Positions 32,515 through 50,862 are shown, numbered from the stretch's first letter. The stretch is 64,000 nucleotides of DNA from IMGVR_UViG_3300037110_000087:243125-307124, one strand, 5' to 3'. Numbers and translations are program-made. The notes: a model not told the origin generated them from the sequence alone.

Positions 32515-33493
32515 AGAGGTTGTAGTGCATAAACTATTGAAGAAGATTACTACCGTTTATTATCACGCTGGTTGTCCTGATGGGATCGCCAGTCGTGAGA
32601 TTCATAGGAAGTTTGCTTATTTAATGGATTTTGGTCCCATTGAATATCTTCCCTTCGTCTATCCTGGACCTCTGCCCAAGGACATGAAGCCAAATACCCT
32701 GTATGTTGATTGTTGTCCTCGTGATGCGGAAGGAATTAGCGTTACTTTGGACCTTGGTGGTATTATTCTAGACCATCATGATTCTCGTAAGGAACTGCTG
32801 CTGTCCATGAAGGAGAAATACCCCGATCAGGTTGTCTATGGTGAGAACAGTAAATGCGAGTCTGGAGCTACGCTCACCTTTAAGGCTATGCTAAGTCTGT
32901 TCCAAGAGTACTGCCAGGAGAAGGGCTTATCCCTCTTTTTCTCTACGGAGAAATTAATATTCTCGATGGAACGGTATGCGACATTGACAGCAATCAGCGA
33001 CACGTGGCATACTGAATCACCTGAGTTTTCTCGATCCAGAGCATTGGCTCATTACATCTTCCTACAGGGAGATGACTGGGATGGTATTCCTTCAGAATTA
33101 GATATTAACATGTCAGTGTCTATTTATGGTTCCTATTTGAAGAAGCTTGAGCGAGAGGCTGATCGTATTTACACGATTGATCTGTCCTGGATGCCTTGGG
33201 CTTCCGATGGTGGCGGAGCCTTCAAAATAGGGTTCATGTGCGGAGACAACACCAGCGATATTGCAGAGATCCTTCGTAACAGAGGTTATGATCTTGTAGT
33301 TGGATTTGCGATCACTATGGCAGGTGATAAGCCTGTCCTCAGGTATTCATTGCGAAGTAGTAATAAATTGGATGTCAGCAAATTCTGCGTTAAATATGGT
33401 GGAGGGGGTCATAAGGCAGCTGCTGGAATGACTCTTGACTACATTGGTCAGCACCCGATTTATTATTTTGTTGAGTTACTACAGGAGAACTAA
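32456..33493 (+). CDS. DHH/DHHA1 phosphoesterase (true start likely GTG near 32525)
   Basis: YYHAGCPDG, ILDHHDS, ESGATL, YSLRS, YGGGGHKAAAG. Confidence 0.85.
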   Translation: MDLVLRCLVFLGARNILLIKEVVVHKLLKKITTVYYHAGCPDGIASREIHRKFAYLMDFGPIEYLPFVYPGPLPKDMKPNTLYVDCCPRDAEGISVTLDLGGIILDHHDSRKELLLSMKEKYPDQVVYGENSKCESGATLTFKAMLSLFQEYCQEKGLSLFFSTEKLIFSMERYATLTAISDTWHTESPEFSRSRALAHYIFLQGDDWDGIPSELDINMSVSIYGSYLKKLEREADRIYTIDLSWMPWASDGGGAFKIGFMCGDNTSDIAEILRNRGYDLVVGFAITMAGDKPVLRYSLRSSNKLDVSKFCVKYGGGGHKAAAGMTLDYIGQHPIYYFVELLQEN

Positions 33494-34595: not shown

Positions 34596-36824
34596 ATGAA
34601 TCCAGTAAGTCGTTATATCAAGTTTGGGCCAAAAGATCTGGTGTTTGTGGAACAGAACGTAACCCATTTCACCACGAAGACTACAAAACCAACCATCTTC
34701 AGCATGAACAACTATTTATTGTTCGATGAGAGCGGATCCATGTATGGGGTGATCCAGACTCTCTGTGATCATATGAAGAAACGCGTCAATACTCTGCCTA
34801 TCGGTGATACAGTCACTCTTGGTTGGTTCAGTGGGCAGGGTAGTTATCGCTTCATTGTGAAGGGTTTCCGCATCAGCACTCCAGCGGACTATGCAACCAT
34901 TTGCAAGATTATTGATCAGAACTGCACGACTCGTGGGACCACTTGTTTCTCCGAGATCTTGTTCGACCTGAATGAAGTGATCGATGAGGTCACCGCTCTC
35001 AACAATCTGCCAAATTCTCTGACCTTCTTCACTGATGGCTATCCGGTCGTCTCCAGCTACAACAAAGAGATCGCGGATATCACCAGTGCGATCAGTCGGG
35101 TTGCATCGAAGATCACTTCTACTCTTCTGATCGGATATGGAAGCTACTACAACAAGCAGCTAATGACCTCAATGGCCGAACTATTTGGTGGCTCATTGAT
35201 TCACAGTGAGAGGATTGGTGAAGAATTCTCCAACCGAATGCACAATTTCACCAGGGACGCACGTGAGAACAGCGGTCGTATCACTCTGGTCGTGACTGGT
35301 ATGAATCCAGAATCTATTGCCTTCAGCATCAATGGTGATCAGATTGTCTACTACAACACCAGCCGGAACGATATTCTCTACACTCCTTGTCAGGGTGAGA
35401 ACTTCATCTACTTCCTAACCACCCACGTGCCTGAAGGAGCAGTAGAATACAAGGGATTCTCAGGTAAGACAGCTGAAGGATTGACGTCTGATTCTTTCGT
35501 GAAGGGAGCGTACGCTCTCGCTTATGCTCTGACTCAGGCGACCAAAACCGATCTGGCTCTGGATCTACTGGTTAAGATTGGAGACATCGCGGTAATCGAT
35601 CGAGTAGTCAATAGTTTCACCAACACAGAATACGGAGTAGCTGAAGCCAACATTTTGGATTGTGTGACCACTCCATCCAAACGCTTCATTGCCGGTCGTC
35701 ACACCAACTACCTTCCCCCTGCGGATGCGTTCTGTCTCAAAGATGCTATTGATTTGCTGGTGAGAGATGACAACGCATTCTTCTATCCCTGCGATGAGTC
35801 GTTCGAATATCAGAGGATCGGAAGAAAGGCAAAAACCAAAGAAGGATACCCGGAGTTCAAGAAAAATATCTCTTCAAAATGTCCTTTGAGTGATCTGGTC
35901 TACCACGAATCTCGGCTTAACCTGAGCATCCGGACCCGAATCGAAGGAACAGTAACATTGGATGAAAAGGCCGAAGAGCAGAATTTCTGCAAGAACTATC
36001 GGACTTTTATCTGGAGAAACTACACGATCGTTAAGGATGGTATTCTCAATCTGACCACCCTGCCTCTGTCAATGAGCAAGGCGACCTTCGACGTACTCCG
36101 GTCTAACGGTATGATTATGGCCGACAAGTGCTCAACACTTACTCCTCCCCCTCCCCAGTGGCAGGAAGGGGAAATTTATTCCGTCAAGCTGGATACCGTG
36201 CCGGTCATGAATCGCAAGATTGCGGAAGGTAACACTTCAGCCAAGTCCCTGGCCCAAGCAGCAGTGAAGGAACTGAAGCTTGAGGCCCAGCAGAAGGTGG
36301 TCCGCAACTTCCTTGGCAAGTACAAGCAGCTTGACAAGACCGCCGTAGGACCCTTCACTGCCGGTCAGAAGACCTATCTGGAAGGCTTCGGAATCACTTC
36401 CAACGGGTTCAACCCGCCTACTGAGACTCTGCCAGCCGAGGACTTCTACGAGGCCCTGGAATTCGAGATCAAAATCAAAGGATTCTCGAGTCTGCCCAAG
36501 GTTCCTGACGTCATCGCGAAAGTGGCAGCCAAGAAGATTCATACTGGTCCAGAACAGCTGATGCTGGCGATGATCAAGGAATGCGAAGATGTTGAAGCCC
36601 TTCATGGTGATAACGCGGCTGTAGCGGTAGCAATCTTCGAGGGAATACTGGCGAAGATCAAACAGGAGCTTGTTGAAGTTCGTGAAAAGATTCAATCGAC
36701 CAAATTTGCGCTGCTTTTAGGCAAGAAGTGGTTTGATGAGTTCAGTTCACGTGATGACTCCAGTTTGACCGTAGATGGCAAAGAAGTAACTTTCTCTCTG
36801 CGTACTAAGCGGGTGGAATTTTAA
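34596..36824 (+). CDS. vWA-domain protein
   Basis: LLFDESGSM (MIDAS), GTT.F, FFTDGYP. Confidence 0.85.
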   Translation: MNPVSRYIKFGPKDLVFVEQNVTHFTTKTTKPTIFSMNNYLLFDESGSMYGVIQTLCDHMKKRVNTLPIGDTVTLGWFSGQGSYRFIVKGFRISTPADYATICKIIDQNCTTRGTTCFSEILFDLNEVIDEVTALNNLPNSLTFFTDGYPVVSSYNKEIADITSAISRVASKITSTLLIGYGSYYNKQLMTSMAELFGGSLIHSERIGEEFSNRMHNFTRDARENSGRITLVVTGMNPESIAFSINGDQIVYYNTSRNDILYTPCQGENFIYFLTTHVPEGAVEYKGFSGKTAEGLTSDSFVKGAYALAYALTQATKTDLALDLLVKIGDIAVIDRVVNSFTNTEYGVAEANILDCVTTPSKRFIAGRHTNYLPPADAFCLKDAIDLLVRDDNAFFYPCDESFEYQRIGRKAKTKEGYPEFKKNISSKCPLSDLVYHESRLNLSIRTRIEGTVTLDEKAEEQNFCKNYRTFIWRNYTIVKDGILNLTTLPLSMSKATFDVLRSNGMIMADKCSTLTPPPPQWQEGEIYSVKLDTVPVMNRKIAEGNTSAKSLAQAAVKELKLEAQQKVVRNFLGKYKQLDKTAVGPFTAGQKTYLEGFGITSNGFNPPTETLPAEDFYEALEFEIKIKGFSSLPKVPDVIAKVAAKKIHTGPEQLMLAMIKECEDVEALHGDNAAVAVAIFEGILAKIKQELVEVREKIQSTKFALLLGKKWFDEFSSRDDSSLTVDGKEVTFSLRTKRVEF

Positions 36825-39725: not shown

Positions 39726-40130
39726 ATGAAAATCAGACAGGGATTTGTTTCTAACAGTAGTTCCAGTAGTTTTTTGATTTATGGAATAGCTCTAGAGCGC
39801 AATGAAATCATGGACAAACTGAGTAGAGAACTGCTTAAGTCGATGTTCATTGAGAGTCGAAAAGGGACTTATGAGGAAGAATTTGAAATTATTGATGAAG
39901 ATCTCGATAATTTTGATCCCCCTATCTATGATGTTGTCGAACATCTTGGCGTAGATTACCATCATCCCTACGATGGGAGTACCTATTACTTTGGTTTATC
40001 CTGGGATGAGGTGGGCGACAATGAGACTGGTGCCCAATTCAAGAAACGAGTCGAAGATTCCATCAAAGGGGTTTTCATTCTTGACTCTGGTGAGACATTT
40101 GGTACCCATGAAGAGGCGTGGCATGACTAA
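39726..40130 (+). CDS. FVSNSSSSSF-leader protein 1
   Basis: Begins MKIRQGFVSNSSSSSF. Confidence 0.85.
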   Translation: MKIRQGFVSNSSSSSFLIYGIALERNEIMDKLSRELLKSMFIESRKGTYEEEFEIIDEDLDNFDPPIYDVVEHLGVDYHHPYDGSTYYFGLSWDEVGDNETGAQFKKRVEDSIKGVFILDSGETFGTHEEAWHD

Positions 40131-40482
40131 TTATCCCGATGGTGACGTAGAATTCAACCGCATTCACAATGACCCCAAATACAACTCCAGTATTCATTTT
40201 CAGGCTGGGGGTGCTGATGATGTCCTGGTGATTGATAGAGATGGAATGCTCTACAAGGGCAAACGGATCGAGGATGCTGGTGAAGCATATGCAGCATTTA
40301 TGCAGATGATGGGACAGATGAATAATCAGCCGAAGATTCGCGAAGCCGCAAAGAAGCTCTATTATGCTGCCCATTGGTCTGCGGATCGTGATGTGGAAGA
40401 GAACAAACTATGGGAGAACCTACGCGATGCCCTGGGACTGGAGCCTGGGAATTCTCCAGAGGAGATCAAGAATGAAAATTAG
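40123..40482 (+). CDS. hypothetical protein
   Basis: Start MTNYPDG overlaps upstream gene end. Confidence 0.6.
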   Translation: MTNYPDGDVEFNRIHNDPKYNSSIHFQAGGADDVLVIDRDGMLYKGKRIEDAGEAYAAFMQMMGQMNNQPKIREAAKKLYYAAHWSADRDVEENKLWENLRDALGLEPGNSPEEIKNEN

Positions 40483-40870
40483 AAATGGATTTGTCTCAAA
40501 CAGTAGTTCTAGCAGCTTCTGTATTTATGGGGTCTGTGTAGAGCGCGGTGATGAGAAACATGTGTTCAGCGACGAGATCATTAAATCTATTGTTGCAGAA
40601 CAATTAGATATGGTTCCTAGAGAAGTCTCTGACGAGACAATCCGTAATTTCGATCTCACCGAGGTTGACGATCTCGAATATATTCTAGCCAAGAGTATTG
40701 GTACTGATTGCTGGCGAGGTGAGGAAGCCTTTTATTTTGGCCGTAAATGGTGCAGAATTAAGGATGACGAGACAGGTGCACAATTCAAACAGTCCATCGA
40801 AGAAAAGCTCCGTGGAGCCTTTAAGAAAGAACCGAAATTCGAGACTCATGACGAGGTTGTTTACAGTTGA
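40472..40870 (+). CDS. FVSNSSSSSF-leader protein 2
   Basis: Begins MKIRNGFVSNSSSSSF; shares D.ETGAQFK with protein 1. Confidence 0.85.
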   Translation: MKIRNGFVSNSSSSSFCIYGVCVERGDEKHVFSDEIIKSIVAEQLDMVPREVSDETIRNFDLTEVDDLEYILAKSIGTDCWRGEEAFYFGRKWCRIKDDETGAQFKQSIEEKLRGAFKKEPKFETHDEVVYS

Positions 40871-40897
40871 AGGTTGTTAAACAAAGTGAGGTGAAAA

Positions 40898-41113
40898 ATG
40901 GCACAGATCGTTCCTGCCCAGAAGGGCTTTGAAATCGTTGGACTCCCAGATGAGGGGGTCCCCGATATCCGCCAGGGTGCTTGGCTTGATTCCACCCATC
41001 TGAGAGGGGTTAAACGTCGCCAGGGTCGCACCAAGTTCACTCCGCTCCGGTTCCCTGATCAGGCCAGCGCTCTCCGGTATTGTCAGCGTCGGAACATTGA
41101 AATCACCGAATAA
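40898..41113 (+). CDS. hypothetical protein
   Basis: GAGGTG RBS. Confidence 0.6.
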   Translation: MAQIVPAQKGFEIVGLPDEGVPDIRQGAWLDSTHLRGVKRRQGRTKFTPLRFPDQASALRYCQRRNIEITE

Positions 41114-41130
41114 TTTACCATGAGGCAGAA

Positions 41131-42231
41131 ATGCTCAGAATCAGGGAATCCTCTATCATCAAGTCCGTGAGGTCGAAGAACTATAACTTCGATTTCGACA
41201 AGAGGACTGGCTTTTTCGCCCGATGGGGAACGACAAAAGAGGATGATCCCTCCATGGCTCCTGCTCCGGAGATTCTCGATTTTGAGATTTCGTATGGTGG
41301 CGACTGTCTGGGGAATTGTCCAATGTGCTATAAGGACAATTCTGGCCCTCAGCCCACCGTTAATCTCTCATTTGAGGATTTTAAGACAATCCTTGATAAG
41401 ATGCCTCCGCTACTTACCCAGGTAGCGTTTGGCATCATGAATATCTCCACCAATCCAGATTTCTTCAAGATGATGGAGTATTGCAGAGAACGAGGTATTG
41501 TTCCTAATTACACCTGTCATGGTCTGGATGTTACTCCTGAGATCGCTGAGCGAACGGCTGCGCTATGTGGTGCGGTGGCTGTTTCTGTGTATGATAAGGA
41601 GAAATCATACAACGCTATCAAGATGTTTACTGATGCTGGCATGAAGCAGGTCAACATTCATTGCATGCTGTCGGAAGAGACATTCGGCTTTGCCAAGAAG
41701 ATTGTGTATGATATTCATACTGATATCCGGCTGGAGAAGCTTAACGCTATTGTGTTCCTGGCCTATAAGCCAAAGGGCCGGGAAGGTGGCAAGAAGTTCT
41801 TTCACACAATCAAAGATCCTGAGAAGTATAAGGAACTGATTCAGTATTGTACCGATCTGAAAGTGAATTGGGGTTGTGATAGCTGCTCTGCTCCGATCGT
41901 GCTCCAGGCATTCCAAGGAACTGGTCGCTATGGATCGGTGGCTCCCTTCATCGAGCCTTGTGAATCATCTTTATTCAGTTCATACATTAGCGCTGAAGGG
42001 ATGTTCTTCCCTTGCAGTTTCACGGAAGGTGAATCGGGGTGGGAACAGGGACTCGATGTTCTCCATTGTGATAATTTCGTCCAGGACATCTGGATGCATC
42101 CACGAACAATTGCTTTCCGCGAGAATCTGATTGGTAGCTGTGAGGGCTGCTCAGGATGTCATTCTCAAAAAATCTGCAGAAGCTGCCCTGTGTTCGATAT
42201 TACCGGCTGCGTCATTCCACGGGAGGATTAA
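41131..42231 (+). CDS. radical SAM enzyme with SPASM/twitch-like C-terminus
   Basis: CLGNCPMC (CxxxCxxC); GCDSC, PCE...ISAEG.FFPCSF, CEGCSGC...CRSCP. Confidence 0.92.
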   Translation: MLRIRESSIIKSVRSKNYNFDFDKRTGFFARWGTTKEDDPSMAPAPEILDFEISYGGDCLGNCPMCYKDNSGPQPTVNLSFEDFKTILDKMPPLLTQVAFGIMNISTNPDFFKMMEYCRERGIVPNYTCHGLDVTPEIAERTAALCGAVAVSVYDKEKSYNAIKMFTDAGMKQVNIHCMLSEETFGFAKKIVYDIHTDIRLEKLNAIVFLAYKPKGREGGKKFFHTIKDPEKYKELIQYCTDLKVNWGCDSCSAPIVLQAFQGTGRYGSVAPFIEPCESSLFSSYISAEGMFFPCSFTEGESGWEQGLDVLHCDNFVQDIWMHPRTIAFRENLIGSCEGCSGCHSQKICRSCPVFDITGCVIPRED

Positions 42232-42626
42232 TGAGAATCAGATCTGGCTTCGTCAGCAATAGTAGTTCCAGTAGCTTTATCATCATTGGTTTCAAGATGA
42301 ATCCCTACGCACCTGAGGCTGTGGAGTTCCTGAAATCCATGGGTGATACCAAGATTGGGACGTTCGAGGACGAAGATGATGAGATGGACTACATCTATGA
42401 TACCTATACGTCTAAACATTGTAAGAAAGGGACTGAGCAATCCCCTTATCGATTCGCTGATGATTACTTTGGGATCGTTCTATTCAATAAGAGCAACGAG
42501 GGTGACTATATACCCAATGGGGAAATAAGCGCAGAGGATCTCATGCGAAGGTCCATTGAAATTGCCATTAAGTTTGGGAAGGACCTTTCCGAGGTCAAGT
42601 TATACTATGGGACCTATTCCAGCTAG
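42231..42626 (+). CDS. FVSNSSSSSF-leader protein 3
   Basis: Begins MRIRSGFVSNSSSSSF; TAATG-coupled to the radical SAM stop. Confidence 0.85.
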   Translation: MRIRSGFVSNSSSSSFIIIGFKMNPYAPEAVEFLKSMGDTKIGTFEDEDDEMDYIYDTYTSKHCKKGTEQSPYRFADDYFGIVLFNKSNEGDYIPNGEISAEDLMRRSIEIAIKFGKDLSEVKLYYGTYSS

Positions 42627-42635
42627 GAGTTTAGA

Positions 42636-43202
42636 ATGAAGATCAGAACTGGTTTTGTCAGCAATAGTAGCTCTAGTAGCTTCGTGGTTGCATTTTCCTA
42701 CGAGAACCCCACCGTTGAGCAGATCCTTGAGGTTTTTAAGCCTAGGGCTTACATGTCGTATAGTTGTTTAATTACCGGCCAAGAGATCGGCAATGCCCTG
42801 GTGCGTGACACTCAGGAACAGAAAGGTATTTTGATCTGTGAAGACAACCTGGGTGAACTATCTGGTATGGTCAATGATGACTGGGAGTTCAATGAATGTT
42901 TACAGGACCCCTGGTATCAGAAGCTTGCGATTCTTATTAAAGAGAGATTCGCGGAACTGAAGAAAGAGGAACCGGAATCTAGCATTGAACAAGAGGGGTG
43001 GAAGATCAAGCAATTCGTTGATAATTTCACTGACAACCTTGGTAATAGTGACCTGCATAATTGGATCAAGAAGAATGAAAGTCAGTATGCATTTGCCTAT
43101 TCTTACTGTGACGAGGGTGGGGGCTGTGGGAGTGCATTGGAGCATGGTGATCACTGGAATAATGTTCCAAAGGAATCACTCTTATATGAAAGTCATCATT
43201 AA
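42636..43202 (+). CDS. FVSNSSSSSF-leader protein 4
   Basis: Begins MKIRTGFVSNSSSSSF. Confidence 0.85.
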   Translation: MKIRTGFVSNSSSSSFVVAFSYENPTVEQILEVFKPRAYMSYSCLITGQEIGNALVRDTQEQKGILICEDNLGELSGMVNDDWEFNECLQDPWYQKLAILIKERFAELKKEEPESSIEQEGWKIKQFVDNFTDNLGNSDLHNWIKKNESQYAFAYSYCDEGGGCGSALEHGDHWNNVPKESLLYESHH

Positions 43203-43480
43203 TGAAAACTTATGTTGTCATTATCAAAGACCTTGAAGGAGAGAAGATTCTCTTAGAATATGGTCGAGATCTTCTAATTAGCCGATCCATTTTAAATAAG
43301 ACTGAAGAAGAACAGAGTGAGTTACTTTGGTTTTGGGCTAATAAAATGTATTCTAATCTTGAATATCAAATGGGATGGAAGGGAGGTATAATTAATTTTA
43401 CTCCCCCTGATGGTGGACCAGATGATAGAATGACCATTCGTGGTGTATCTTATTTAAATCTTAAAGAGGAGAATAAATGA
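43202..43480 (+). CDS. hypothetical protein
   Basis: Coupled ORF. Confidence 0.6.
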   Translation: MKTYVVIIKDLEGEKILLEYGRDLLISRSILNKTEEEQSELLWFWANKMYSNLEYQMGWKGGIINFTPPDGGPDDRMTIRGVSYLNLKEENK

Positions 43481-43932
43481 AGATCAGACAGGGTTTCGTC
43501 AGCAATAGTAGTTCCAGTAGTTTCATCGTCATCGGCAATAGTGGCAGTTTCGAAGATCTTCCCGATTTTATTGGGCTAGATGACGTTCTTGAATGTGGTG
43601 ACGCAATTGGATCCACCGAATTTGGTTGGGGTCCTGATACTCTGTATGATATGGGTAGCCGGATTAATCTCTGCGCCATACAGGCTCTTAGGAGAGGATA
43701 TTGTGATGAGGGCGAAGGTGAAATAATCAACCAGGAACGGAAAGATAGTATCCTTCGTGTAATTAAAAAGCATAATCCAGAGATCTGTGATATCACATTC
43801 AAATCAGAATGGGCCTATATTGACCACCAGTCCGTCGATGAACTGGCTGAGATGTTCGAATCAGATGACACACTGGAACGGTTCATTTTCGATAGTGGTT
43901 CCTATATCAAACTGGACAACGATAACCATTGA
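43477..43932 (+). CDS. FVSNSSSSSF-leader protein 5
   Basis: Begins MKIRQGFVSNSSSSSF. Confidence 0.85.
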   Translation: MKIRQGFVSNSSSSSFIVIGNSGSFEDLPDFIGLDDVLECGDAIGSTEFGWGPDTLYDMGSRINLCAIQALRRGYCDEGEGEIINQERKDSILRVIKKHNPEICDITFKSEWAYIDHQSVDELAEMFESDDTLERFIFDSGSYIKLDNDNH

Positions 43933-43939
43933 GGGCAAT

Positions 43940-44095
43940 ATGTGGAGTGGTTGGGCTAACCCAAAGTATGATCGAATAATCACGGTGATCTTTGTGGCCA
44001 TTGCTGCAGCTTTTGGATTGGGGATCGTTGCAGCAATATATCTTCCTCAACTATGGCATTGGCTAATACCAATTATTCATCACTGGGCTTCCTAA
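43940..44095 (+). CDS. small membrane protein
   Basis: MWSGW... single TM segment. Confidence 0.5.
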   Translation: MWSGWANPKYDRIITVIFVAIAAAFGLGIVAAIYLPQLWHWLIPIIHHWAS

Positions 44096-44128
44096 AGGTT
44101 ATTTGGAATAGTCCTAGGAGTCAGTCCC

Positions 44129-44884
44129 GTGAATCTGAATGAGAAAGATTACGATATTAAAGGAATCAAGTTCTGGCAGTCTTTCCTTGATCGTCTTGGA
44201 AGTTACAGTGGTGTTACTCATACTGCCGTGGTCCATAAGATCAAATACTGCAGTAATCACATTGAGATTGAGTGCACGAGTCCACGCTCGATTATTACTC
44301 TGTTAAATTTGTTATTCCAGGCATATGAGAAGGATGGAAAGATTATCTTACCTGACGGTGGTTTAGCTGGCTATCGTCAGTTAAAATGTCTGTGGTTGTA
44401 TATGACTGTGCTATTTGAAGATCAAGAGAATAGCTTACTACTGCAAAGTTTCATCAACCACTACTATCCAGGCAGTCTCAGATTGTTCACTACCAGATTC
44501 CTAAAACATTTGAACAAGATTGTTGACCTGGAAGGGATTGTAAGAAGTAGTGGCGTCCAGGATGTAGATTTTACCGAGACTGGGATGCAGTTCACTTGGC
44601 CCATTATCTTCGGGAAGACCAAACAGGAGATTCTTGAGGGGAACATTTCCGGCTTAGTATTCCAGCGGGACGAGACAAGGGAATTAGAAATTCTAGATGT
44701 CAGCTTTGATTTCTGTTGGGCTGCACTATCTGGATCATCCTGGGCCGGGAATATTGATGCTTTATTTGAGGATGAGAGTCTCCCATTCAAGCATCTGAAA
44801 GAGCATGAATTTTCAAAATTGGATAAGGATGACTTTCTCTATTGTAGGGACAAGGTAGAAGATTTAATGAACAATATGATATAA
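44129..44884 (+). CDS. hypothetical protein
   Basis: AGGAG RBS, GTG start. Confidence 0.7.
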   Translation: MNLNEKDYDIKGIKFWQSFLDRLGSYSGVTHTAVVHKIKYCSNHIEIECTSPRSIITLLNLLFQAYEKDGKIILPDGGLAGYRQLKCLWLYMTVLFEDQENSLLLQSFINHYYPGSLRLFTTRFLKHLNKIVDLEGIVRSSGVQDVDFTETGMQFTWPIIFGKTKQEILEGNISGLVFQRDETRELEILDVSFDFCWAALSGSSWAGNIDALFEDESLPFKHLKEHEFSKLDKDDFLYCRDKVEDLMNNMI

Positions 44885-44904
44885 TAAAAGGAAAGGAGTC
44901 CCAG

Positions 44905-45372
44905 GTGGTTAGATTGCACTTTATTGCGACAGTTAAAGAAATCAGCAGAGAAGGTATTAAGAAGAACGCTAGTATTGCTGATGATAATACTTACCTTTAT
45001 TCACGTAAAGAAGGAATGACGGGAGAGCGTATTGTTCGTGATGCCTATATGCAGTGTCCTGAATCCATTTTCCAGAAGGTTGTTGCTTCCCATCTTGAAG
45101 GTCTTGCGGAATACACCGATACCCCTTTCCCGGATTATTTACCCAAAGTCCAAGCAGCTATCCTTACCAGTAATCGCAGAAAGATCTGGATTGCCTTCGA
45201 TTTTGCTGAATCCCTTGGTGAAATGTATACTCTTAAAGAAATGTTTGAGTATATTTTCAATGTAAATATGGGATTTGACATCGATCCAGAATTTCAATCC
45301 TGGATCGAATCTTATACTCCTGCCGAAAAAGATATTGCAATTCTTGAAAAGGCAAGACGCAAGAACCTATAG
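44905..45372 (+). CDS. hypothetical protein
   Basis: AAGGAG RBS. Confidence 0.65.
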   Translation: MVRLHFIATVKEISREGIKKNASIADDNTYLYSRKEGMTGERIVRDAYMQCPESIFQKVVASHLEGLAEYTDTPFPDYLPKVQAAILTSNRRKIWIAFDFAESLGEMYTLKEMFEYIFNVNMGFDIDPEFQSWIESYTPAEKDIAILEKARRKNL

Positions 45373-45402
45373 ACCCCGCCAATTGGCTTAGCAAAGGAAC
45401 AA

Positions 45403-46209
45403 ATGGTTGACTTTCATAACTATCAGTTGCCACCGGGATCTCGATGGCGACAAATGACTTTTTGGGATCCCCTACTTGGTTGTACTCCTGTATCTGAGGG
45501 CTGCAGATATTGTAGTTCTGCTCGTGCTGTTGACGAAGAACTAATCACCTGGAGAGATGGTCTGCCCCATTTCTGTGGCAAGGTCAAATGGGATGAATCA
45601 GCGTATGAAGACGCTGAGTTCTACCCCGAGAATTCCCAGGTTTTTGTCTGTGGCAGAAGCGATTTGTTTCATGAGGCTGTCTCTGATGAGATCATATTAA
45701 GGATCATAGAGGCCGGAAGATTGCGGCCTGACTGTTTATTCTTTGTTATCACTAAACGTCCGGAAAGACTACACGAGATTTGCTCTAGGATTGATGTTCC
45801 TGTGAACTTCTGGCTCGGTATCACTGTCGAGAATCAACGGGTAATTGACCGATTGAAATGCTTCGAAGGGGTGAGAGCCACTCGTGTTGTAAGTGCCAAA
45901 CCTCTGCTCAGCAATATTGATTTTTCTCCCTATATGAATCTGTTTGACATGATTATCGTAGGTGGAGAATACAACTACTTGGATCTCGATCGATCGCGTC
46001 CTATGAGTCTTAATTGGGCGAGATCAATTCGTGATACCTGCGTCAAACACAACAAACCTTTTAGCTTCCATAACTGGGGCAGCTGGATTCCTTGTTCGGA
46101 AAAAGAATCCACCAGGGTTGTTGATGGTCATTTCATGAAGCACCACGATAATTCTGAGGGTGCTTATCTCCTGGATGGTGTCAGTTGGGACCAATACCCA
46201 CAATCATAG
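45403..46209 (+). CDS. DUF5131 (phage Gp37Gp68, radical-SAM-like) protein
   Basis: GCTPVSEGCRYC, FVCGRSDLFH, TKRPER, WLGITVENQ, IVGGE, WARSIRD.C. Confidence 0.88.
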   Translation: MVDFHNYQLPPGSRWRQMTFWDPLLGCTPVSEGCRYCSSARAVDEELITWRDGLPHFCGKVKWDESAYEDAEFYPENSQVFVCGRSDLFHEAVSDEIILRIIEAGRLRPDCLFFVITKRPERLHEICSRIDVPVNFWLGITVENQRVIDRLKCFEGVRATRVVSAKPLLSNIDFSPYMNLFDMIIVGGEYNYLDLDRSRPMSLNWARSIRDTCVKHNKPFSFHNWGSWIPCSEKESTRVVDGHFMKHHDNSEGAYLLDGVSWDQYPQS

Positions 46210-46724
46210 GTTCTTGGGCTACTCACTATTGGTATCCTGAATTTAGAGACAACGGTGATATTGACTGTTATGTTGCACCACAATTTTGCAAATTTTTGCG
46301 GGAAAAGAAATTTGATCCCCAAGCTTACACACGGATCAATGGACTTCTGGATGTTTGCAATTTGGAAGGTCCACTAATAGAAATAGATGGAATCTGGTTT
46401 AAAATAGCCACACCAAAAATGTTGTTGGCTATCAAACGAGTCCATATTTCATTAACGCTCAAATGGTTGAAGAATATCTCAGACTTTGTGTGGCTGGCCC
46501 AGCAAGGCGTCAAGATAGACACTGAGACAGCCAATGCCTTCCACCAAAGAATGATCTACATGCATGAACAATTCTCTGATGAAAATGGAAATGAAGTTAT
46601 ACCCGAGGATATCTCACCCACTGAGTTAGCCACTCTCGTGGAGTGTCGTCGTGTCAGTCCAACTAAAGCTGCAGAAATTTTTATACAGAATTGTGGTCTG
46701 GACTTAAAAGATTACTTAATATAG
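46185..46724 (+). CDS. putative nucleotidyltransferase-fold phage protein
   Basis: IIGS.A, GDIDC (GS + DxD), ATP.ML..IK..H...KW.K...D. Confidence 0.55.
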   Translation: MGPIPTIIGSWATHYWYPEFRDNGDIDCYVAPQFCKFLREKKFDPQAYTRINGLLDVCNLEGPLIEIDGIWFKIATPKMLLAIKRVHISLTLKWLKNISDFVWLAQQGVKIDTETANAFHQRMIYMHEQFSDENGNEVIPEDISPTELATLVECRRVSPTKAAEIFIQNCGLDLKDYLI

Positions 46725-46732
46725 GAGGGTCT

Positions 46733-47020
46733 ATGAAGACTCGCAGCGGTTTCGTCAGCAATAGTAGCTCTAGTAGCTTCGTCATTCTGGGATTTGAGAT
46801 CCCGAATAGAATGGATCCACCAGAGGAGGGTGAATATAGCGTCGTCCAGACCGATTGTGACACGACTGTCTTCGGCTGGAAGATCAACGATGGGGGTGAA
46901 TTCCTGGATTACAATGAGGTTTCCTGGGAGGAATTAACTAAGGAAGCCAAGGCTATCTCCAGTAGGTACAAGATTCCGATGGAGAAGATTAAACTCTATA
47001 CCGGGACCAATAGCAATTAG
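46733..47020 (+). CDS. FVSNSSSSSF-leader protein 6
   Basis: Begins MKTRSGFVSNSSSSSF; ends KIKLYTGT, like protein 3 (EVKLYYGT). Confidence 0.85.
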   Translation: MKTRSGFVSNSSSSSFVILGFEIPNRMDPPEEGEYSVVQTDCDTTVFGWKINDGGEFLDYNEVSWEELTKEAKAISSRYKIPMEKIKLYTGTNSN

Positions 47021-47386: not shown

Positions 47387-48610
47387 CTAGACCAGCGCGA
47401 GGTTGTCCAGCAGTTCCTGGTCCACCGCACTGTCTTCCAGGAAGAACGGCTTGTTCTTGATCTTGGTCATGCTCAGGTTGGGCTTCTCGTCGCCTTCCAG
47501 GAGCGTGTTCTCCAGGTCGTATTCACTGGAGAGCAGCTGGCCCAGCCACGCCATGAGCCGCTGGGTCTTCCTGGCGTCATCATTGTGATGGCTGGTGAGT
47601 TCGGTGCAGAAGTTGATCAGGTCATAGACCGTGCAGTCAACGTCGATCACCCTGGCCTTCCGGGCGCTGATGGATTCGAAGTTGACCAGCCCATACCGAC
47701 GCAGGGGATTCCCGCCCAGCTTGTAGAGGGCCTTGACGATCTTGAAGTCGCTGGTCTTGCCGCTGGACTCTTCCAGGTCGATGAATTCCGTGAAGCTGGT
47801 GATCTTCTGGTAGAGGCTGTGCAGTTCGCCCAGGCTGGCAGGGGAAGCCATGGCGGTGAGCATCCGCTGATGGATGGCATCGTAGGCTTCCTCGTTGTTA
47901 AAGGTGCTGATGAAGCGGCTGAGCATGACCTGGGGATCTTCCTTGCCCAGATTGATCTCGCTCTTGAAGGCCGGTCCGTAGCCGATCGCACCGTTGGTGC
48001 AGATCTCACGCAGGAGACTGACGAAAGCGGAGGGACGGCCCCAGCCATCGATGGGAGAATCCACCACGAACATGTTGATGAAGCTCTCGCCACCCAGGTT
48101 GACGCTGGTGCCCCGGCTCACGGTGGGCTGATATTCGGAGCGGACCACACCATTGGAGTAGCCGATCTTGGCCACCTGATTGATCTGCGCGATGCGCCGG
48201 GAGTCCTCGACACGGACGATCGGTTTGAGCGGGTTCGACACGGCTAGCGCATGGGTCCGGCCATCGGATTCCTTGGCCAGCGCGAAGCGCCACAGCTTGT
48301 CATCGTGCTTCTCGACCGCCCTGGCGATCACTTCCTCAGGGCTGAACAGCGTGAAGATGTTCTGGCTGATGCCCAGGTTGCTGGTCAGGCTGGTCACGAA
48401 CCGGTCGGTCGGCACGACATCCTGGCCCTCGATCCGGAGCCGCCGGATGGTGCGCTTCTTGGTGGGATCGGTGGAGAGGTCGATCTGAATCGCGTTGAGC
48501 GAAGCGATCGGATATTCCACCTGGGTGGGCAGTTCGTCGCTGCTGCGATGCATCAGGTTGCGATCGGCGCGGGAAACCATGCTCTGGTGCTGATTGCGGT
48601 GGTCGGTCAT
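47387..48610 (-). CDS. DUF932-like protein
   Basis: Start MTDHRN with AGGAG RBS; LLREICTNGAI motif; visibly GC-rich. Confidence 0.65.
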   Translation of the reverse strand: MTDHRNQHQSMVSRADRNLMHRSSDELPTQVEYPIASLNAIQIDLSTDPTKKRTIRRLRIEGQDVVPTDRFVTSLTSNLGISQNIFTLFSPEEVIARAVEKHDDKLWRFALAKESDGRTHALAVSNPLKPIVRVEDSRRIAQINQVAKIGYSNGVVRSEYQPTVSRGTSVNLGGESFINMFVVDSPIDGWGRPSAFVSLLREICTNGAIGYGPAFKSEINLGKEDPQVMLSRFISTFNNEEAYDAIHQRMLTAMASPASLGELHSLYQKITSFTEFIDLEESSGKTSDFKIVKALYKLGGNPLRRYGLVNFESISARKARVIDVDCTVYDLINFCTELTSHHNDDARKTQRLMAWLGQLLSSEYDLENTLLEGDEKPNLSMTKIKNKPFFLEDSAVDQELLDNLALV

Positions 48611-48641
48611 TGGGATGCTCCTAGGCCGAAGGGCCAAAACT

Positions 48642-48670
48642 ATTATAACACCCTGGGGATTCCCTGTCAA
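48642..48670 (-). promoter_or_regulatory. consensus sigma70 promoter
   Basis: TTGACA-17-TATAAT with TG extension. Confidence 0.9.
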
Positions 48671-48705
48671 GTATCCCCAGGATACCCCCTGATAGGATGA
48701 GTGGT

Positions 48706-49071
48706 TCATGATTTCTCCGGTTCCAAGGTGAACAGTTCTTGCGCGGCCTGAATCACTTCAAACAAGGTGTCAGCCCTTTTCCTGGCCCCAGTCAGCAGGG
48801 AACGGATTTCCCAGCCCTGGCCTTCGGGGCTAGAGGTATCAATATCACCCCGGTTGTTGACGATGATGGTGTAGGTCGGATTTATGCTATCAGGCCAGCA
48901 TTCCTTGAATCCATTCTCTGTCAGGGCATCCAGGATTTCTTGGGCGGAGAGTGAAGGGGGATCAGGGGTGCAGCAGGGAAAACAGTGCATGACTGCCCCT
49001 TCCGGCTGGGTGTGACAGACGCAGTGGCATTGTGAGCGATACATAACTTCTCCTCCTAAAAGGTACATCAC
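48706..49071 (-). CDS. hypothetical protein, Cys/His-rich N-terminus
   Basis: CHCVCH...HCFPCC. Confidence 0.6.
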   Translation of the reverse strand: MMYLLGGEVMYRSQCHCVCHTQPEGAVMHCFPCCTPDPPSLSAQEILDALTENGFKECWPDSINPTYTIIVNNRGDIDTSSPEGQGWEIRSLLTGARKRADTLFEVIQAAQELFTLEPEKS

Positions 49072-49092
49072 ATTACCTTTGCTTGGTGAACA

Positions 49093-49350
49093 TCACATTA
49101 CCTTTGCTTTCCATGAGGGTCTGTCGCCATTCATCTTGGCCTGATCGACCACTTTCCTTGCTTCCCGCTTGTTCAGGCCCAGGCCCAGTAGCTTGTTGGT
49201 AGCCCTGTCGATGAGAGTGACTTTCTTCTCCAACGCAGTCAGGTAGCCAATATCCCGCCGACCATCCAACTCCCGGATCGCAAGAGTGAGGGAGTCCTGA
49301 ATCTTCTGCTGGATCTGAGCAGCGGTAAGAGCGATGACTTCATAAGCCAT
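49093..49350 (-). CDS. hypothetical protein
   Basis: Start MAYEVI. Confidence 0.6.
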   Translation of the reverse strand: MAYEVIALTAAQIQQKIQDSLTLAIRELDGRRDIGYLTALEKKVTLIDRATNKLLGLGLNKREARKVVDQAKMNGDRPSWKAKVM

Positions 49351-49747
49351 AATCACCACCTGCAGGTGTGTTGTGGAAGTGAATCGCATCATCAAGTTGT
49401 CTGGCGTCCCATCGGGCCATCCCACAGACCTGATCGACATAGCAGTTGATCCGGCACATGAGCGTTCCGCCTCTGGCATGACCCAGCACAAACCGCCAGT
49501 AGAAGAGCCAGGGCAGTTCATTCCCATCTTTATCCTTGGCTAGAGTGTGGATCTCAGGTCCGATGGCAGCAAGACCTGCCTTGGTTGGGACCACGGAAGG
49601 TGATCGGCCCTCCGCGATGCATTTGTCGATGAAGGCGTTGAGATCGTAGATCTTCTCTCCCTTCCCATTCGTTCTTGCTTGGACGACAGGATCACCACTC
49701 ATAGGACCTCCAATAACCCTTTGGCCCCTTCCGGGGCCTGGGGTCAC
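49340..49747 (-). CDS. hypothetical protein (true start likely MSGDP)
   Basis: ORF in run. Confidence 0.55.
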   Translation of the reverse strand: MTPGPGRGQRVIGGPMSGDPVVQARTNGKGEKIYDLNAFIDKCIAEGRSPSVVPTKAGLAAIGPEIHTLAKDKDGNELPWLFYWRFVLGHARGGTLMCRINCYVDQVCGMARWDARQLDDAIHFHNTPAGGDYGL

Positions 49748-50862
49748 TAGTCATCATTACGCATAAGCTGGGAACGCCTTTTCTTGCGCTTCTTGAAATA
49801 TTCGGGCATGGGAGCATCTGTTGCGCAGATCTTCTCCCTCATGATCACAGCACGTTCATTCACCGCCTTGTTGGACTTGAGGCTCATCCACTGTCCGTTC
49901 TCCACCACCCACTGTTCCCTGGGTGTGGCAGAGCGGACGAAAGGCCAGTGGGTATCCTTGGATTGGACGATCTGCGCGATCTTATCCCCGAACTTGCGGA
50001 ACACCCGGCCACACATCTGAATGGTGGGACCCTTCACTGAGGGACGACAGAACACCGTCTTGAGCGAGGGACAATTCAGTCCCTCAGTCAGCACGAACAC
50101 GTTGAACAGGATGTCTAGCTTCCCCTCTTCGAACGCCTCAAGCTGCGACTCTCGATCGGTCTGCCCGGTCACCACATCAGCCCTGAGGCCAGCCTGATTG
50201 ATGATCTCGCATGCCTGATAGCATTCCTCCATGGTGAGGAAATAGCAGATGCTCTTGCCCCATTTCTTGGGGTCTTCCAGGTAGCAGGTGGTGACGGACT
50301 CAGGGGTCCAGGAATCGAGCATATACTGGTCGAATGCAGCCAGATAGCCCTCTTCGATCAGTTGCCGGTGCCCCGCATCCGTAATCGACTTGTTGAAGCA
50401 GAGCTTCATGTTGTCAGTCCGGTAGGGGGTGGCGGACAGGCCCAGCAGCACCTTCGGATTGCACGAGGTATAGAGTGTGACAGCAGACTCCGCTGCGCTG
50501 TGATGGGACTCATCGAACACCAGGATATCCACCTTGGGCGGGGTCTTGTCGAACATCGACACGAAGTGGATGTTCTCCAGGCTGGTGAACTTGAGGTTCT
50601 CGTCTGCTGCCTGACTCAGGAGGGTTCTCCGCATGGCACACCAGCCAATCTGGATATCCTCCTTCTTCTTGCCGAATAGGGCAGCATGATTGTCGATCAG
50701 ATCCTTGCAGATCGTCAGGCCCATGAGCGTCTTGCCGGAACCCACAGGGGATTCAACATTGACCGCTGCGGTGTGATTCACCGATTTCTCACAGATGTCG
50801 TGGAATGCAGCCACCGACTTCGTGATGATCCGCTTCTGGTAGGGCCGTGATTCGGGTTTCAT
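49747..50862 (-). CDS. superfamily 2 helicase
   Basis: SPVGSGKT, DESHH, GLSATPYR, VLTEGLN.P, QMCGRVFR. Confidence 0.9.
   Translation of the reverse strand: MKPESRPYQKRIITKSVAAFHDICEKSVNHTAAVNVESPVGSGKTLMGLTICKDLIDNHAALFGKKKEDIQIGWCAMRRTLLSQAADENLKFTSLENIHFVSMFDKTPPKVDILVFDESHHSAAESAVTLYTSCNPKVLLGLSATPYRTDNMKLCFNKSITDAGHRQLIEEGYLAAFDQYMLDSWTPESVTTCYLEDPKKWGKSICYFLTMEECYQACEIINQAGLRADVVTGQTDRESQLEAFEEGKLDILFNVFVLTEGLNCPSLKTVFCRPSVKGPTIQMCGRVFRKFGDKIAQIVQSKDTHWPFVRSATPREQWVVENGQWMSLKSNKAVNERAVIMREKICATDAPMPEYFKKRKKRRSQLMRNDD

What the first reader, a model, noticed from the sequence alone, without database searches (positions are those of the whole stretch)
39726..47020. Radical SAM/SPASM enzyme surrounded by six proteins sharing an M[KR]xRxGFVSNSSSSSF leader
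Seen: six ORFs (39726, 40472, 42231, 42636, 43477, 46733) have a near-invariant 16-aa N-terminus and divergent acidic bodies forming subfamilies (1+2 share ETGAQFK; 3+6 share KLYxGT). One is TAATG-coupled to the radical SAM stop codon. Known: SPASM enzymes modify peptides and proteins (anSME Ser/Cys to formylglycine, RiPP crosslinks, epimerases), often via a conserved motif. Inference: an undescribed phage protein-modification system with a multi-substrate Ser-rich tag. Alternatives are a pyruvoyl/autocleavage site or a capsid-targeting sequence like those of T4 internal proteins.
Basis: partly seen in the sequence, partly recalled or inferred. Interest (0 to 1): 0.9.

Follow-up and report, generated by a model that had tools for sequence, protein, structure and literature searches.

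The report
Phage radical SAM enzyme with tagged proteins
A large phage carries a radical SAM enzyme next to six small acidic proteins that all start with the same 16 amino acids, and this enzyme-plus-tag pairing recurs in hundreds of other phage sequences yet matches no curated family or paper I could find, so it is probably a widespread, unstudied viral protein-modification system.

Summary
Six + strand genes begin M-[KR]-x-R-x-G-F-V-S-N-S-S-S-S-S-F and flank a radical SAM gene (41131-42231). One of them overlaps its stop codon (TAATG).

The link holds elsewhere. Of 80 IMG/VR loci chosen only by rSAM homology, 76 carry 1-13 tagged genes within 10 kb. All 334 tags lie on the rSAM strand, mostly downstream. 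Among cultured phages, the rSAM (173 records) and a tagged protein (175 records) occur in the same T4-like genera.

The tag is conserved at the amino-acid level while the rSAMs share only about 44% identity. It sits at residue 1 and is predicted disordered over residues 1-10. It is attached to bodies that show no detectable homology to each other (123 BLAST clusters, median pI 4.5, no Pfam hit).

The enzyme's nearest structural and sequence relatives are peptide- or alcohol-oxidising twitch/SPASM enzymes (SkfB, SuiB, anSME, BtrN). Only one auxiliary cluster's worth of cysteines is conserved, so "SPASM" is only partly right.

Best reading: the enzyme modifies the tag on many unrelated phage proteins. 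The modification, its chemistry and its biological role are all inferred. No matching family model or paper was found.

The parts
41131..42231 (+). Radical SAM enzyme, 366 aa. It has CxxxCxxC at C59/C63/C66, a small N-terminal beta domain (residues 1-52), and a twitch/SPASM-type C-terminal part with a CX12GX4C hairpin (C277-G290-C295).
   Evidence: - ORF and translation. SD GAGG upstream.
- PHROG 7293, E 8e-94. Pfam Radical_SAM 22.7 bits, below the 29.5 cutoff.
- Invariant Cys C59, C63, C66, C252, C277, C295, C352 in 17 homologs.
- AF2 pLDDT 89.
- Foldseek top hits SkfB, SuiB, anSMEcpe, CteB, ChlB, PqqE.
- Profile hits BtrN and SkfB.
39726..40130 (+). Tagged protein 1, 134 aa, body cluster 2 (ETGAQFK ... 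THEEAWHD type).
   Evidence: The only distant body homolog found (P0165) also carries the tag. Body pI 4.34.
40472..40870 (+). Tagged protein 2, 132 aa, body cluster 2, paralog of protein 1 (43% identity).
   Evidence: SD GGAG upstream.
42231..42626 (+). Tagged protein 3, 131 aa. Its start overlaps the rSAM stop codon (TAATG). C-terminus KLYYGT.
   Evidence: A BLAST singleton at 1e-4. Weakly linked to protein 6 at 1e-3.
42636..43202 (+). Tagged protein 4, 188 aa, body cluster 0. This is the most widespread body family. It has C-terminal motifs DE(D/G)G, LEHG and S-H-H, and matches PHROG 7397 over its full length.
   Evidence: AF2 pLDDT 81.9, with residues 1-10 below 50 and S13-F20 forming strand 1. 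No fold match in PDB or BFVD.
43477..43932 (+). Tagged protein 5, 151 aa, body cluster 11. Its start overlaps the end of the untagged 92-aa ORF 43202-43480.
46733..47020 (+). Tagged protein 6, 95 aa, body cluster 27, C-terminus KLYTGT.
43202..46724 (+). Interspersed untagged genes. They have no homolog in any of the other 120+ loci, so they are not part of the conserved module. They are a 92-aa ORF (43202-43480), 251 aa (44129-44884), 155 aa (44905-45372), a DUF5131 protein (45403-46209) and 179 aa (46185-46724).
   Evidence: tblastn of these proteins against all loci hits only the window's own contig. DUF5131 E 3.5e-46.

Best explanation
This is a two-part, virus-restricted module. One part is a radical SAM enzyme with a twitch/SPASM-type auxiliary-cluster domain. 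The other is a variable set of small acidic proteins that all carry the same 16-residue N-terminal tag, M-K-x-R-x-G-F-V-S-N-S-S-S-S-S-F.

Proposed mechanism:
1. The enzyme recognises the exposed N-terminal tail of each tagged protein. This probably happens before or during folding, because the second half of the tag becomes the first beta strand of the body.
2. It generates a 5'-deoxyadenosyl radical and abstracts a hydrogen from a residue in the invariant S9-N10-S11-S12 core or its G6-F7 flank.
3. The favoured chemistry is alcohol-to-carbonyl oxidation of a serine (formylglycine type, -2 Da). Its nearest relatives include the radical SAM dehydrogenases anSME and BtrN, and the tag is a run of CH2OH side chains.
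4. Other candidates are a Phe-Xaa-Ser type C-C crosslink or an epimerisation.
5. The modification would be a common maturation step for many unrelated phage proteins. Their small size, acidity, copy number and fast turnover suggest host-takeover or counter-defence roles.

What is shown: the motif, its amino-acid-level conservation, its position at residue 1, the tight genomic linkage to the enzyme, and the enzyme's fold class.

What is inferred: that the tag is the substrate, the chemistry, and the biological role.
For: (1) Linkage ascertained from the enzyme.
- 76 of 80 IMG/VR loci picked only by rSAM homology carry 1-13 tags within 10 kb.
- All 334 tags are on the rSAM strand, 289 downstream against 62 upstream.
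- The first downstream tag lies within 30 nt of the rSAM stop in 18 of 68 loci.
- After collapsing to 76 rSAM clusters at 90% identity, 73 still have a tag.

(2) Linkage ascertained from the tag.
- 15 of 28 tag loci have the rSAM within 10 kb.
- At least three of the remaining loci come from contigs where the rSAM lies further away (L022/L080, L025/L111, L004/L062).

(3) Cultured phages.
- The rSAM is in 173 records and a tagged protein in 175.
- The genus lists are the same apart from two rSAM-only records (one Vibrio, one unnamed). The genes are 20 kb apart in these phages.

(4) The only gene families shared widely among 82 rSAM loci are the rSAM and the tagged genes.

(5) The tag is nearly invariant while the rSAMs share a median 44% identity.
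- Ser codons switch between AGY and TCN.
- The tag starts at residue 1 in nearly all of the top 150 of 25,434 profile hits.

(6) Tag residues 1-10 are predicted disordered and accessible.

(7) The bodies are not detectably homologous.
- 353 proteins fall into 123 BLAST clusters.
- hhalign between the 14 largest clusters gives only one pair above 50% probability.
- The shared element is therefore the tag, not a fold.

(8) The enzyme resembles peptide- or protein-modifying and alcohol-oxidising rSAMs: SkfB 3e-10, SuiB with peptide 6e-09, anSMEcpe with peptide 8.5e-09, CteB and ChlB by Foldseek, and BtrN and SkfB by sequence profile.

(9) One natural isolate (phage KLB1) has lost most of the rSAM and also the tag-bearing half of one tagged gene.
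Against: - No modification has been observed, and all the evidence is genomic or predicted.
- No RRE-like leader-binding domain is present: the N-terminal 80 residues are all beta.
- The tag matches no known rSAM substrate motif.
- The Foldseek list also holds small-molecule rSAM enzymes (BlsE, DesII, viperin) at somewhat weaker scores.
- In T4-like phages the genes are 20 kb apart.
- Four rSAM loci have no tag within 10 kb.
- Phage KLB1 keeps one intact tagged gene without an intact rSAM, so at least that protein may tolerate being unmodified.
- Part of the tag (S13-F16) is buried as a beta strand in the one model made, so a structural role is not excluded.
Confidence: 0.55

Rival explanations
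1. Docking-motif (adaptor) model. The tag is not modified. It is a short linear motif by which each paralog binds the rSAM, for example by strand addition to its conserved N-terminal beta domain. The variable bodies then bring different targets (host proteins, nucleic acids, metabolites) to one catalytic subunit, in the manner of F-box adaptors.
For: - One enzyme serves many unrelated, fast-evolving bodies.
- A one-to-many binding constraint would explain why the tag is far more conserved than the enzyme.
- The rSAM has a conserved extra N-terminal beta domain of unknown role (invariant S15, N19, F22, G27, W32, G33).
- The genomic linkage is the same as for the best explanation.
Against: - A 16-residue Ser-rich linear motif at the extreme N-terminus looks more like an enzyme substrate than a stable interface.
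- The nearest structural relatives bind peptides in the active site.
- No precedent for adaptor-guided rSAM enzymes was found.
- The bodies have no recognisable binding domains.
Confidence: 0.15
2. One very divergent protein superfamily. The tag is the N-terminal strand-plus-Ser-rich loop of a shared ligand-, metal- or phosphate-binding or catalytic site. The rSAM supplies or processes a small-molecule ligand or cofactor for these proteins rather than modifying them.
For: - In the one model made, S13-F20 is the first strand of the fold.
- Body cluster 0 has enzyme-like conserved polar motifs (D159, G162, E169, H170, S186, H188).
- One member was named 'inorganic pyrophosphatase/exopolyphosphatase' by JGI.
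- Small-molecule rSAM enzymes (BtrN, BlsE, DesII) are among the relatives.
Against: - There is no detectable homology between body families once the tag is removed.
- There is no Pfam, PDB or BFVD match, so the DHH lead fails.
- Residues 1-10 are the most conserved yet are predicted disordered.
- Bodies range from 66 to 279 aa with quite different C-terminal motifs.
Confidence: 0.12
3. The tag is a sorting, timing or stability signal that has nothing to do with rSAM catalysis. Examples would be packaging into the capsid for injection, regulated proteolysis, or localisation. Under this reading, the gene neighbourhood reflects a shared accessory-gene region.
For: - Short invariant N-terminal peptides on unrelated proteins are typical of targeting signals, such as the capsid-targeting sequence of T4 internal proteins (my own knowledge).
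- The module sits among non-essential early/middle-type genes.
- Phage KLB1 retains a tagged gene without an intact rSAM.
Against: - It does not explain 95% co-occurrence, strict co-orientation and frequent translational coupling with one enzyme family across rSAMs that share only 44% identity.
- No other gene family is shared widely with the module.
- The tag has no Glu for a T4-type prohead-protease cut, and it is too polar for a Sec signal (seen directly in the sequence).
Confidence: 0.1
4. Chance, or a DNA-level repeat: a recombination or regulatory sequence that merely happens to be translated.
For: Within the window some tag pairs share exact runs of 20-27 nt.
Against: - Third codon positions are only 53% identical against 89% for positions 1+2.
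- Ser positions switch between AGY and TCN, and Arg between AGA and CGN, across 118 tags.
- The motif always lies in frame at a start codon with an SD.
Confidence: 0.01

Closest known systems
Anaerobic sulfatase-maturing enzymes (anSME: AtsB, anSMEcpe) acting on sulfatases
   Same: - A radical SAM enzyme with C-terminal auxiliary Fe-S cluster(s) that acts on full-length proteins rather than short peptides.
- It acts at a short invariant Ser/Cys-containing motif near the N-terminus, before folding, and without an RRE domain.
- It is a structural match (Foldseek E 8.5e-09, TM about 0.55).
- The tag is rich in the same CH2OH side chain that anSME oxidises.
   Different: - The substrate motif (C/S)-x-(P/A)-x-R is absent.
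- The substrates are not sulfatases and share no fold.
- Only one auxiliary cluster's worth of Cys is conserved, against seven Cys in anSME.
- There is no NCBIfam anSME hit.
- The system is virus-restricted, with up to 13-14 substrates per locus.
RiPP radical SAM maturases with twitch/SPASM domains (SkfB, CteB, SuiB, ChlB, PqqE) and their precursor peptides
   Same: - They are the best structural matches (SkfB E 3e-10, SuiB 6e-09), and SkfB also matches by sequence profile.
- The enzyme gene lies next to co-oriented genes that share a conserved N-terminal recognition sequence.
   Different: - No RRE domain is present.
- The 'precursors' are 66-279-aa folded acidic proteins, not peptides.
- The conserved part is only 16 residues at residue 1.
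- No Cys, Trp or Lys crosslink partners are conserved.
- No leader protease or exporter is conserved in the locus.
BtrN (twitch-domain radical SAM dehydrogenase)
   Same: It is the best sequence-profile hit in the PDB (E 4.7e-04). It has a single auxiliary cluster, and it oxidises an alcohol to a carbonyl, the chemistry favoured here for a serine.
   Different: BtrN acts on a small-molecule aminocyclitol. The match is weak and covers only the cluster region and the C-terminal tail.
ProcM with the prochlorosin precursors: one enzyme, dozens of substrates with a conserved leader (my own knowledge, an analogy only)
   Same: One modifying enzyme per genome serves many paralogous substrates that share a conserved N-terminal recognition sequence and have hypervariable remainders.
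   Different: The enzyme class is different (a lanthionine synthetase). The leader there is long and the variable part short, whereas here the tag is short and the variable part is a whole protein.
Capsid-targeting sequence of phage T4 internal proteins (my own knowledge)
   Same: A short N-terminal peptide is shared by otherwise unrelated small phage proteins.
   Different: The T4 sequence ends at a prohead-protease site after Glu and has no linked rSAM. The tag here has no Glu and is tied to an rSAM in 95% of loci.

Membership tests
Radical SAM superfamily | CxxxCxxC motif binding the SAM-cleaving [4Fe-4S] cluster, in a partial TIM barrel | tested here: met
   C59, C63 and C66 are invariant in 17 homologs. 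The AF2 model is an alternating beta/alpha core with pLDDT 89. 73 PDB matches at E<=1e-3; the top 50 shown are all radical SAM enzymes.
Radical SAM superfamily | Pfam PF04055 above the gathering score | tested here: inconclusive
   The window protein scores 22.7 bits against a 29.5 cutoff. Many homologs carry a precomputed PF04055 hit.
SPASM-domain radical SAM enzymes | Seven-Cys signature CX9-15GX4C ... CX2CX5CX3C ... C, binding two auxiliary clusters | tested here: inconclusive
   - The CX12GX4C hairpin (C277-G290-C295) is invariant.
- The window copy and its closest relatives also have a CX2CX5CX2C block (residues 341-353).
- That block is absent from most family members.
- Only C252, C277, C295 and C352 are invariant.
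- This is enough for one cluster, a twitch-like arrangement.
SPASM-domain radical SAM enzymes | Pfam PF13186 (SPASM) hit | tested here: not met
   There is no hit on the window protein at E<=0.1. Only 2 of the 120 listed homologs carry PF13186.
Anaerobic sulfatase-maturing enzyme system | Substrate carries (C/S)-x-(P/A)-x-R and is a sulfatase | tested here: not met
   The tag is M-K-x-R-x-G-F-V-S-N-S-S-S-S-S-F. 80 representative tagged proteins have no Pfam domain.
Anaerobic sulfatase-maturing enzyme system | Enzyme matches the curated anSME model | tested here: not met
   NCBIfam gives only weak partial hits to MftC (1.9e-07, 30.6 bits against a 265 cutoff) and NirJ2.
RiPP radical SAM maturase clusters | RRE (winged-helix) leader-binding domain in the enzyme or a partner | tested here: not met
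   Residues 1-80 of the model are beta strands only, with no helix before residue 81. There is no Pfam domain and no conserved partner gene.
RiPP radical SAM maturase clusters | Short precursor peptides (leader plus core) encoded next to the enzyme | tested here: not met
   Adjacency and co-orientation are met. But the products are 66-279 aa (median 134), and the one modelled folds confidently.
RiPP radical SAM maturase clusters | Leader protease and/or exporter in the cluster | tested here: not met
   In 82 loci, only the rSAM and the tagged genes are shared by most loci; the next real + strand family is in 15.
T4-type capsid-targeting sequence | N-terminal peptide removed by the prohead protease after Glu, with the protein found in virions | not testable with these tools
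   There is no Glu in tag positions 1-16. No virion proteome of a carrier phage was found.
Pyruvoyl-dependent (self-cleaving Ser) enzymes | Autocatalytic X-Ser cleavage within a conserved fold | not testable with these tools
   Cleavage cannot be tested here. The bodies are not detectably homologous, which argues against one autocatalytic fold.
Glycyl radical enzymes and their activases | R-V-x-G-[FWY] fingerprint in the C-terminal domain of a large enzyme, with an activase that has an N-terminal cluster motif | tested here: not met
   The tag has R-x-G-F at residues 4-7, with different spacing, in a disordered N-terminal tail of small proteins. The Foldseek hits shown are not activases.
DHH phosphoesterases (a lead from one JGI name) | DHH-family motifs and fold | tested here: not met
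   There is no Pfam hit and no PDB sequence hit. There is no fold match: the best Foldseek E is 3.9.
PHROG 7293 (rSAM) and PHROG 7397 (tagged protein); both are annotated 'unknown function' | Profile match | tested here: met
   The rSAM matches at 8.4e-94. Protein 4 matches over its full length at 3.5e-10. The other five match only over the tag.

The most novel reading that the evidence does not exclude
Phages possess their own general protein-tagging chemistry. A single radical SAM enzyme installs a so far unknown post-translational modification on a universal 16-residue N-terminal tag. That tag is carried by thousands to tens of thousands of unrelated small acidic effector families. It would then mark a very large, hidden repertoire of host-takeover or counter-defence proteins whose activity or stability depends on radical chemistry. 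Alternatively, the tag recruits interchangeable adaptor proteins to one radical enzyme, which would be a new organisational principle for radical SAM enzymes.
Probability: 0.45. Interest if true: 0.9.

Novelty: new variant of a known kind. Interest (0 to 1): 0.82.

Why it matters
If the enzyme does modify the tag, several things follow.

- This would be a protein-level counterpart of RiPP maturation that is specific to viruses and very widespread. A profile search found 25,434 protein clusters at E<=1e-3 and 1,447 at E<=1e-10. At least 2,557 rSAM clusters were found.
- It would add a new substrate motif, and possibly a new reaction, to radical SAM enzymology.
- It would give a one-line sequence rule for finding a large class of unstudied phage effectors.
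- It would offer a short genetically encoded tag with a dedicated modifying enzyme, which may be useful as a tool.

It can be tested directly in laboratory E. coli, because phages RB43 and Lw1 carry the enzyme and a tagged gene (two tagged genes were mapped in the relatives KP15, CfP1 and L017).

Tried and rejected
- **DHH/pyrophosphatase lead.** It came from one JGI name. It found no support from Pfam, NCBIfam, PDB sequence search or Foldseek.
- **Fold search of the protein-4 model.** Nothing significant against PDB or BFVD.
- **Pfam on 80 representative tagged proteins.** Only noise at E>0.002. PADLOC found nothing.
- **Homology between body families.** hhalign without the tag gave only clusters 1 and 12 related, at 83%. 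The idea of one diverged fold is therefore not supported.
- **Other conserved partners.** None is shared by most loci in 82 loci. The window's own interspersed genes (DUF5131 and others) recur nowhere else.
- **vWA/MIDAS protein.** It is a neighbour only in the T4-like group.
- **DNA similarity of the region to known phages.** None. tblastn of protein 4 against cultured phages found nothing. The link to cultured phages came from the rSAM and from the 170-aa tagged protein of L016.
- **Scan of cellular genomes with the tag.** It found 136 stretches, almost all on MAG contigs. Three of the 12 loci returned have the rSAM within 10 kb.
- **Literature.** Searches for the motif, accessions, phage rSAM/RiPP terms and KP15-group papers found no description.
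- **Body of protein 1 without its tag.** The only distant relative also carries the tag.

Full report
**Observation.**
The six + strand ORFs at 39726, 40472, 42231, 42636, 43477 and 46733 exist. All begin M-[KR]-x-R-x-G-F-V-S-N-S-S-S-S-S-F.
- A six-frame scan of the 64-kb window finds the full tag only at these six places.
- Each has a Shine-Dalgarno sequence.
- The radical SAM gene (41131-42231) ends in TAA, which overlaps the ATG of the third tagged gene.
- Proteins 1 and 2 are 43% identical and share ETGAQFK. Proteins 3 and 6 share KLYxGT.
- All six bodies are acidic, pI 4.2-4.7.
- The window is the last 64 kb of a 307-kb IMG/VR phage contig. It carries tRNAs, an SbcC-like nuclease subunit, a helicase, an RNA ligase and NAD-salvage genes. 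No DNA similarity to cultured phages was found for the region 39726-47020.

**Protein-level selection, not a DNA repeat.**
- Within the window the 48-nt tags are 89% identical at codon positions 1+2 but only 53% at position 3.
- Across 118 distinct tags from 28 loci, every Ser position uses both AGY and TCN codons, and Arg4 uses both AGA and CGN.
- S9, N10, S11 and S12 are invariant. K2, R4, G6, F7, V8, S13, S15 and F16 are conserved in at least 93% of tags. Positions 3, 5 and 14 vary. These figures come from regex-selected tags, so the invariance is partly imposed by the selection.

**The link to the enzyme holds elsewhere.**
- Starting from the tag, 28 IMG/VR loci were fetched, and 15 hold an rSAM homolog within 10 kb. 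At least three of the others come from contigs where the rSAM lies further away.
- Starting from the enzyme alone, 80 loci were fetched with an alignment of rSAM homologs. Of these, 76 contain 1-13 tags within 10 kb.
- All 334 tags are on the rSAM strand. There are 289 downstream and 62 upstream. The first downstream tag starts within 30 nt of the rSAM stop in 18 of 68 loci.
- These rSAMs form 76 clusters at 90% identity with a median pairwise identity of 44%. 73 of the 76 have a tag nearby.
- The exact string FVSNSSSS occurs only 587 times in all 2.9 million IMG/VR contigs, so the background rate is negligible.
- An all-against-all comparison of ORFs in 82 rSAM loci finds only the rSAM and the tagged genes shared by most loci; the next real + strand family is in 15.
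- The untagged genes interspersed in the window, including a DUF5131 protein, recur nowhere else.
- A further groundwater contig shows the rSAM followed by ten tagged genes in tandem.

**Cultured phages.**
- The rSAM has homologs at about 44% identity in 173 phage records. These are T4-like phages of Klebsiella, Enterobacter, Cronobacter, Citrobacter and Escherichia, including KP15, RB43 and Lw1.
- A 170-aa tagged protein occurs in 175 records from the same genera; two rSAM records (one Vibrio, one unnamed) have no counterpart in that list.
- In KP15 the two tagged genes are KP15_102 and KP15_97. They lie about 20 kb from the rSAM gene KP15_135.
- In one viable isolate, phage KLB1, the rSAM is reduced to a 76-aa remnant and the KP15_102 ortholog to a 52-aa remnant without its tag. 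The second tagged gene is intact. This is a single case. It fits a functional link and shows that the module is dispensable in the laboratory.

**Size and distribution.**
- A profile of 80 diverse tagged proteins was searched against 1.84 billion representative proteins. It finds 25,434 hits at E<=1e-3 and 1,447 at E<=1e-10.
- The weaker hits may include some Ser-rich false positives that I could not inspect.
- In nearly all of the top 150 hits the match starts at residue 1. A few proteins carry two tags and look like fused tandem genes.
- The rSAM family has at least 2,557 clusters at 90% identity.
- In 185,579 species genomes the tag string occurs 136 times. Of the 12 loci returned, 11 are MAG contigs and one is from an isolate assembly; three have the rSAM within 10 kb. 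The system therefore looks restricted to viruses.

**The tagged proteins.**
- 353 distinct tagged proteins were collected, 66-279 aa long with a median of 134.
- With the tag removed they fall into 123 BLAST clusters, 94 of them singletons.
- hhalign between the 14 largest clusters gives one related pair only.
- Bodies are strongly acidic: median pI is 4.5 and 88% are below 5.5, against 30% of control ORFs.
- 80 representatives have no Pfam domain. The six window proteins have no NCBIfam or PADLOC hit of note.
- Protein 4 belongs to the most widespread body family, which has conserved C-terminal polar motifs.
- Its AlphaFold model is confident (pLDDT 81.9). The exception is residues 1-10, which fall below 50. 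S13-F20 form the first strand.
- The model matches nothing in PDB or BFVD. The DHH lead suggested by one JGI name fails.

**The enzyme.**
- Seventeen homologs share C59, C63 and C66 (CxxxCxxC) and four further Cys: C252, C277, C295 and C352. They also share a CX12GX4C hairpin.
- The window copy and its closest relatives have an extra CX2CX5CX2C block, but most family members lack it. Family-wide, one auxiliary cluster (twitch-like) is supported rather than a canonical SPASM domain.
- Pfam SPASM does not hit the window protein.
- The model (pLDDT 89, pTM 0.89) has a conserved all-beta N-terminal domain before the barrel and no RRE-like helices.
- The Foldseek top hits are SkfB, SuiB (with peptide), anSMEcpe (with peptide), TigE, CteB, BlsE, DesII, ChlB and PqqE.
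- By sequence profile, the only PDB hits at E<=1e-3 are BtrN and SkfB, both twitch enzymes.

**Interpretation.**
The most economical reading is that the tag is the recognition and modification site of the rSAM, which serves many unrelated substrates.
- The enzyme's relatives include the alcohol-oxidising anSME and BtrN, and the tag is a run of serines. I therefore favour Ser oxidation to a formylglycine-type carbonyl.
- A Phe-Xaa-Ser type crosslink and an epimerisation are the alternatives. All three are inferences.
- The bodies are small, acidic, multi-copy and fast-evolving, and they sit among accessory genes. This suggests host-takeover or counter-defence roles, which is also an inference.
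- The rivals are an adaptor (docking) model, a single divergent superfamily with a shared Ser-rich site, and an rSAM-independent sorting signal. A DNA-level repeat is excluded.

**Known or new.**
PHROGs 7293 and 7397 already group these proteins, but as 'unknown function'. No Pfam, NCBIfam or PADLOC model describes the system, and none of the papers searched does either. It works most like anSME acting on sulfatases, or like a RiPP maturase with many precursors. It fails the defining tests of both (see the membership table). I rate it a new variant of a known kind, with high interest.

Noticed in passing
window 34596-36824 (+): A 742-aa protein (PHROG 2426, unknown function) is homologous (27% identity, E 5e-64) to KP15_100, a vWA/MIDAS protein that sits between KP15's two tagged genes. 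It recurs next to tagged genes only in the T4-like loci (L010, L011, L016, L017, L112, L124).
   Followed up: partly
PP444686.1 (loci L127 2486-2716 and L128 5142-5300): Klebsiella phage vB_KM5a1-KLB1 has only a 76-aa C-terminal remnant of the rSAM. It also has a 52-aa tag-less remnant of the KP15_102-type protein, 20 kb away. Its second tagged gene is intact. This is a natural partial co-loss in a viable phage.
   Followed up: partly
window 23240-24343 and 25751-27127 (+); KP15_110; L125 1121-2671: NAD-salvage genes (NMN adenylyltransferase/Nudix and nicotinamide phosphoribosyltransferase) recur within 10-20 kb of the module in unrelated phages. This may just be synteny of an accessory region.
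   Followed up: no
window 47387-50000 (-): A GC-rich island (0.56 against 0.42-0.47 on either side) holds minus-strand ORFs (440, 121 and 144 aa) that have no Pfam hit; the 440-aa ORF also has no PHROG hit. It lies directly after the last tagged gene and may be a foreign insertion. A second GC peak lies at 14-16 kb.
   Followed up: partly
window 54804-63930: Six tRNA genes (Arg, Pro, Ile x2, Cys, Phe) are spread over 9 kb, with an HNH endonuclease gene (55640-56419) among them.
   Followed up: no
window 41131-41253: The public gene call for the rSAM is 325 aa and starts at Met42. The 366-aa form is supported by a GAGG Shine-Dalgarno sequence and by strong conservation of residues 10-45 in homologs. 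Annotations of this family may routinely miss the N-terminal beta domain.
   Followed up: yes
database proteins P0166-P0172, P0185: Some predicted proteins carry two tags. The second is internal and preceded by M or V, as if two tandem tagged genes were fused or read through. One (P0185) shows a variant tag, D-F-V-T-N-S-S-S-S-S-Y.
   Followed up: no
window 45403-46209 (+): A DUF5131 (phage Gp37/Gp68 family) protein with an N-terminal Cys-rich motif lies inside the cluster. It is not conserved with the module elsewhere.
   Followed up: partly
window 32456-33493 (+): A genuine DHH phosphoesterase (PHROG 4771, E 3e-26) lies 6 kb upstream. It is unrelated to the tagged proteins, despite the JGI 'pyrophosphatase' name on one tagged homolog.
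   Followed up: no
tagged body cluster 3 (e.g. L083 17124-17516, L125 10530-10907): One recurrent body family has Cys pairs directly after the tag (F-x-C-[DE]-x-C-G), perhaps a zinc ribbon. In several members the tag variant F-I-S-N-S-S-S-T-S-F tracks this family across genomes.
   Followed up: no
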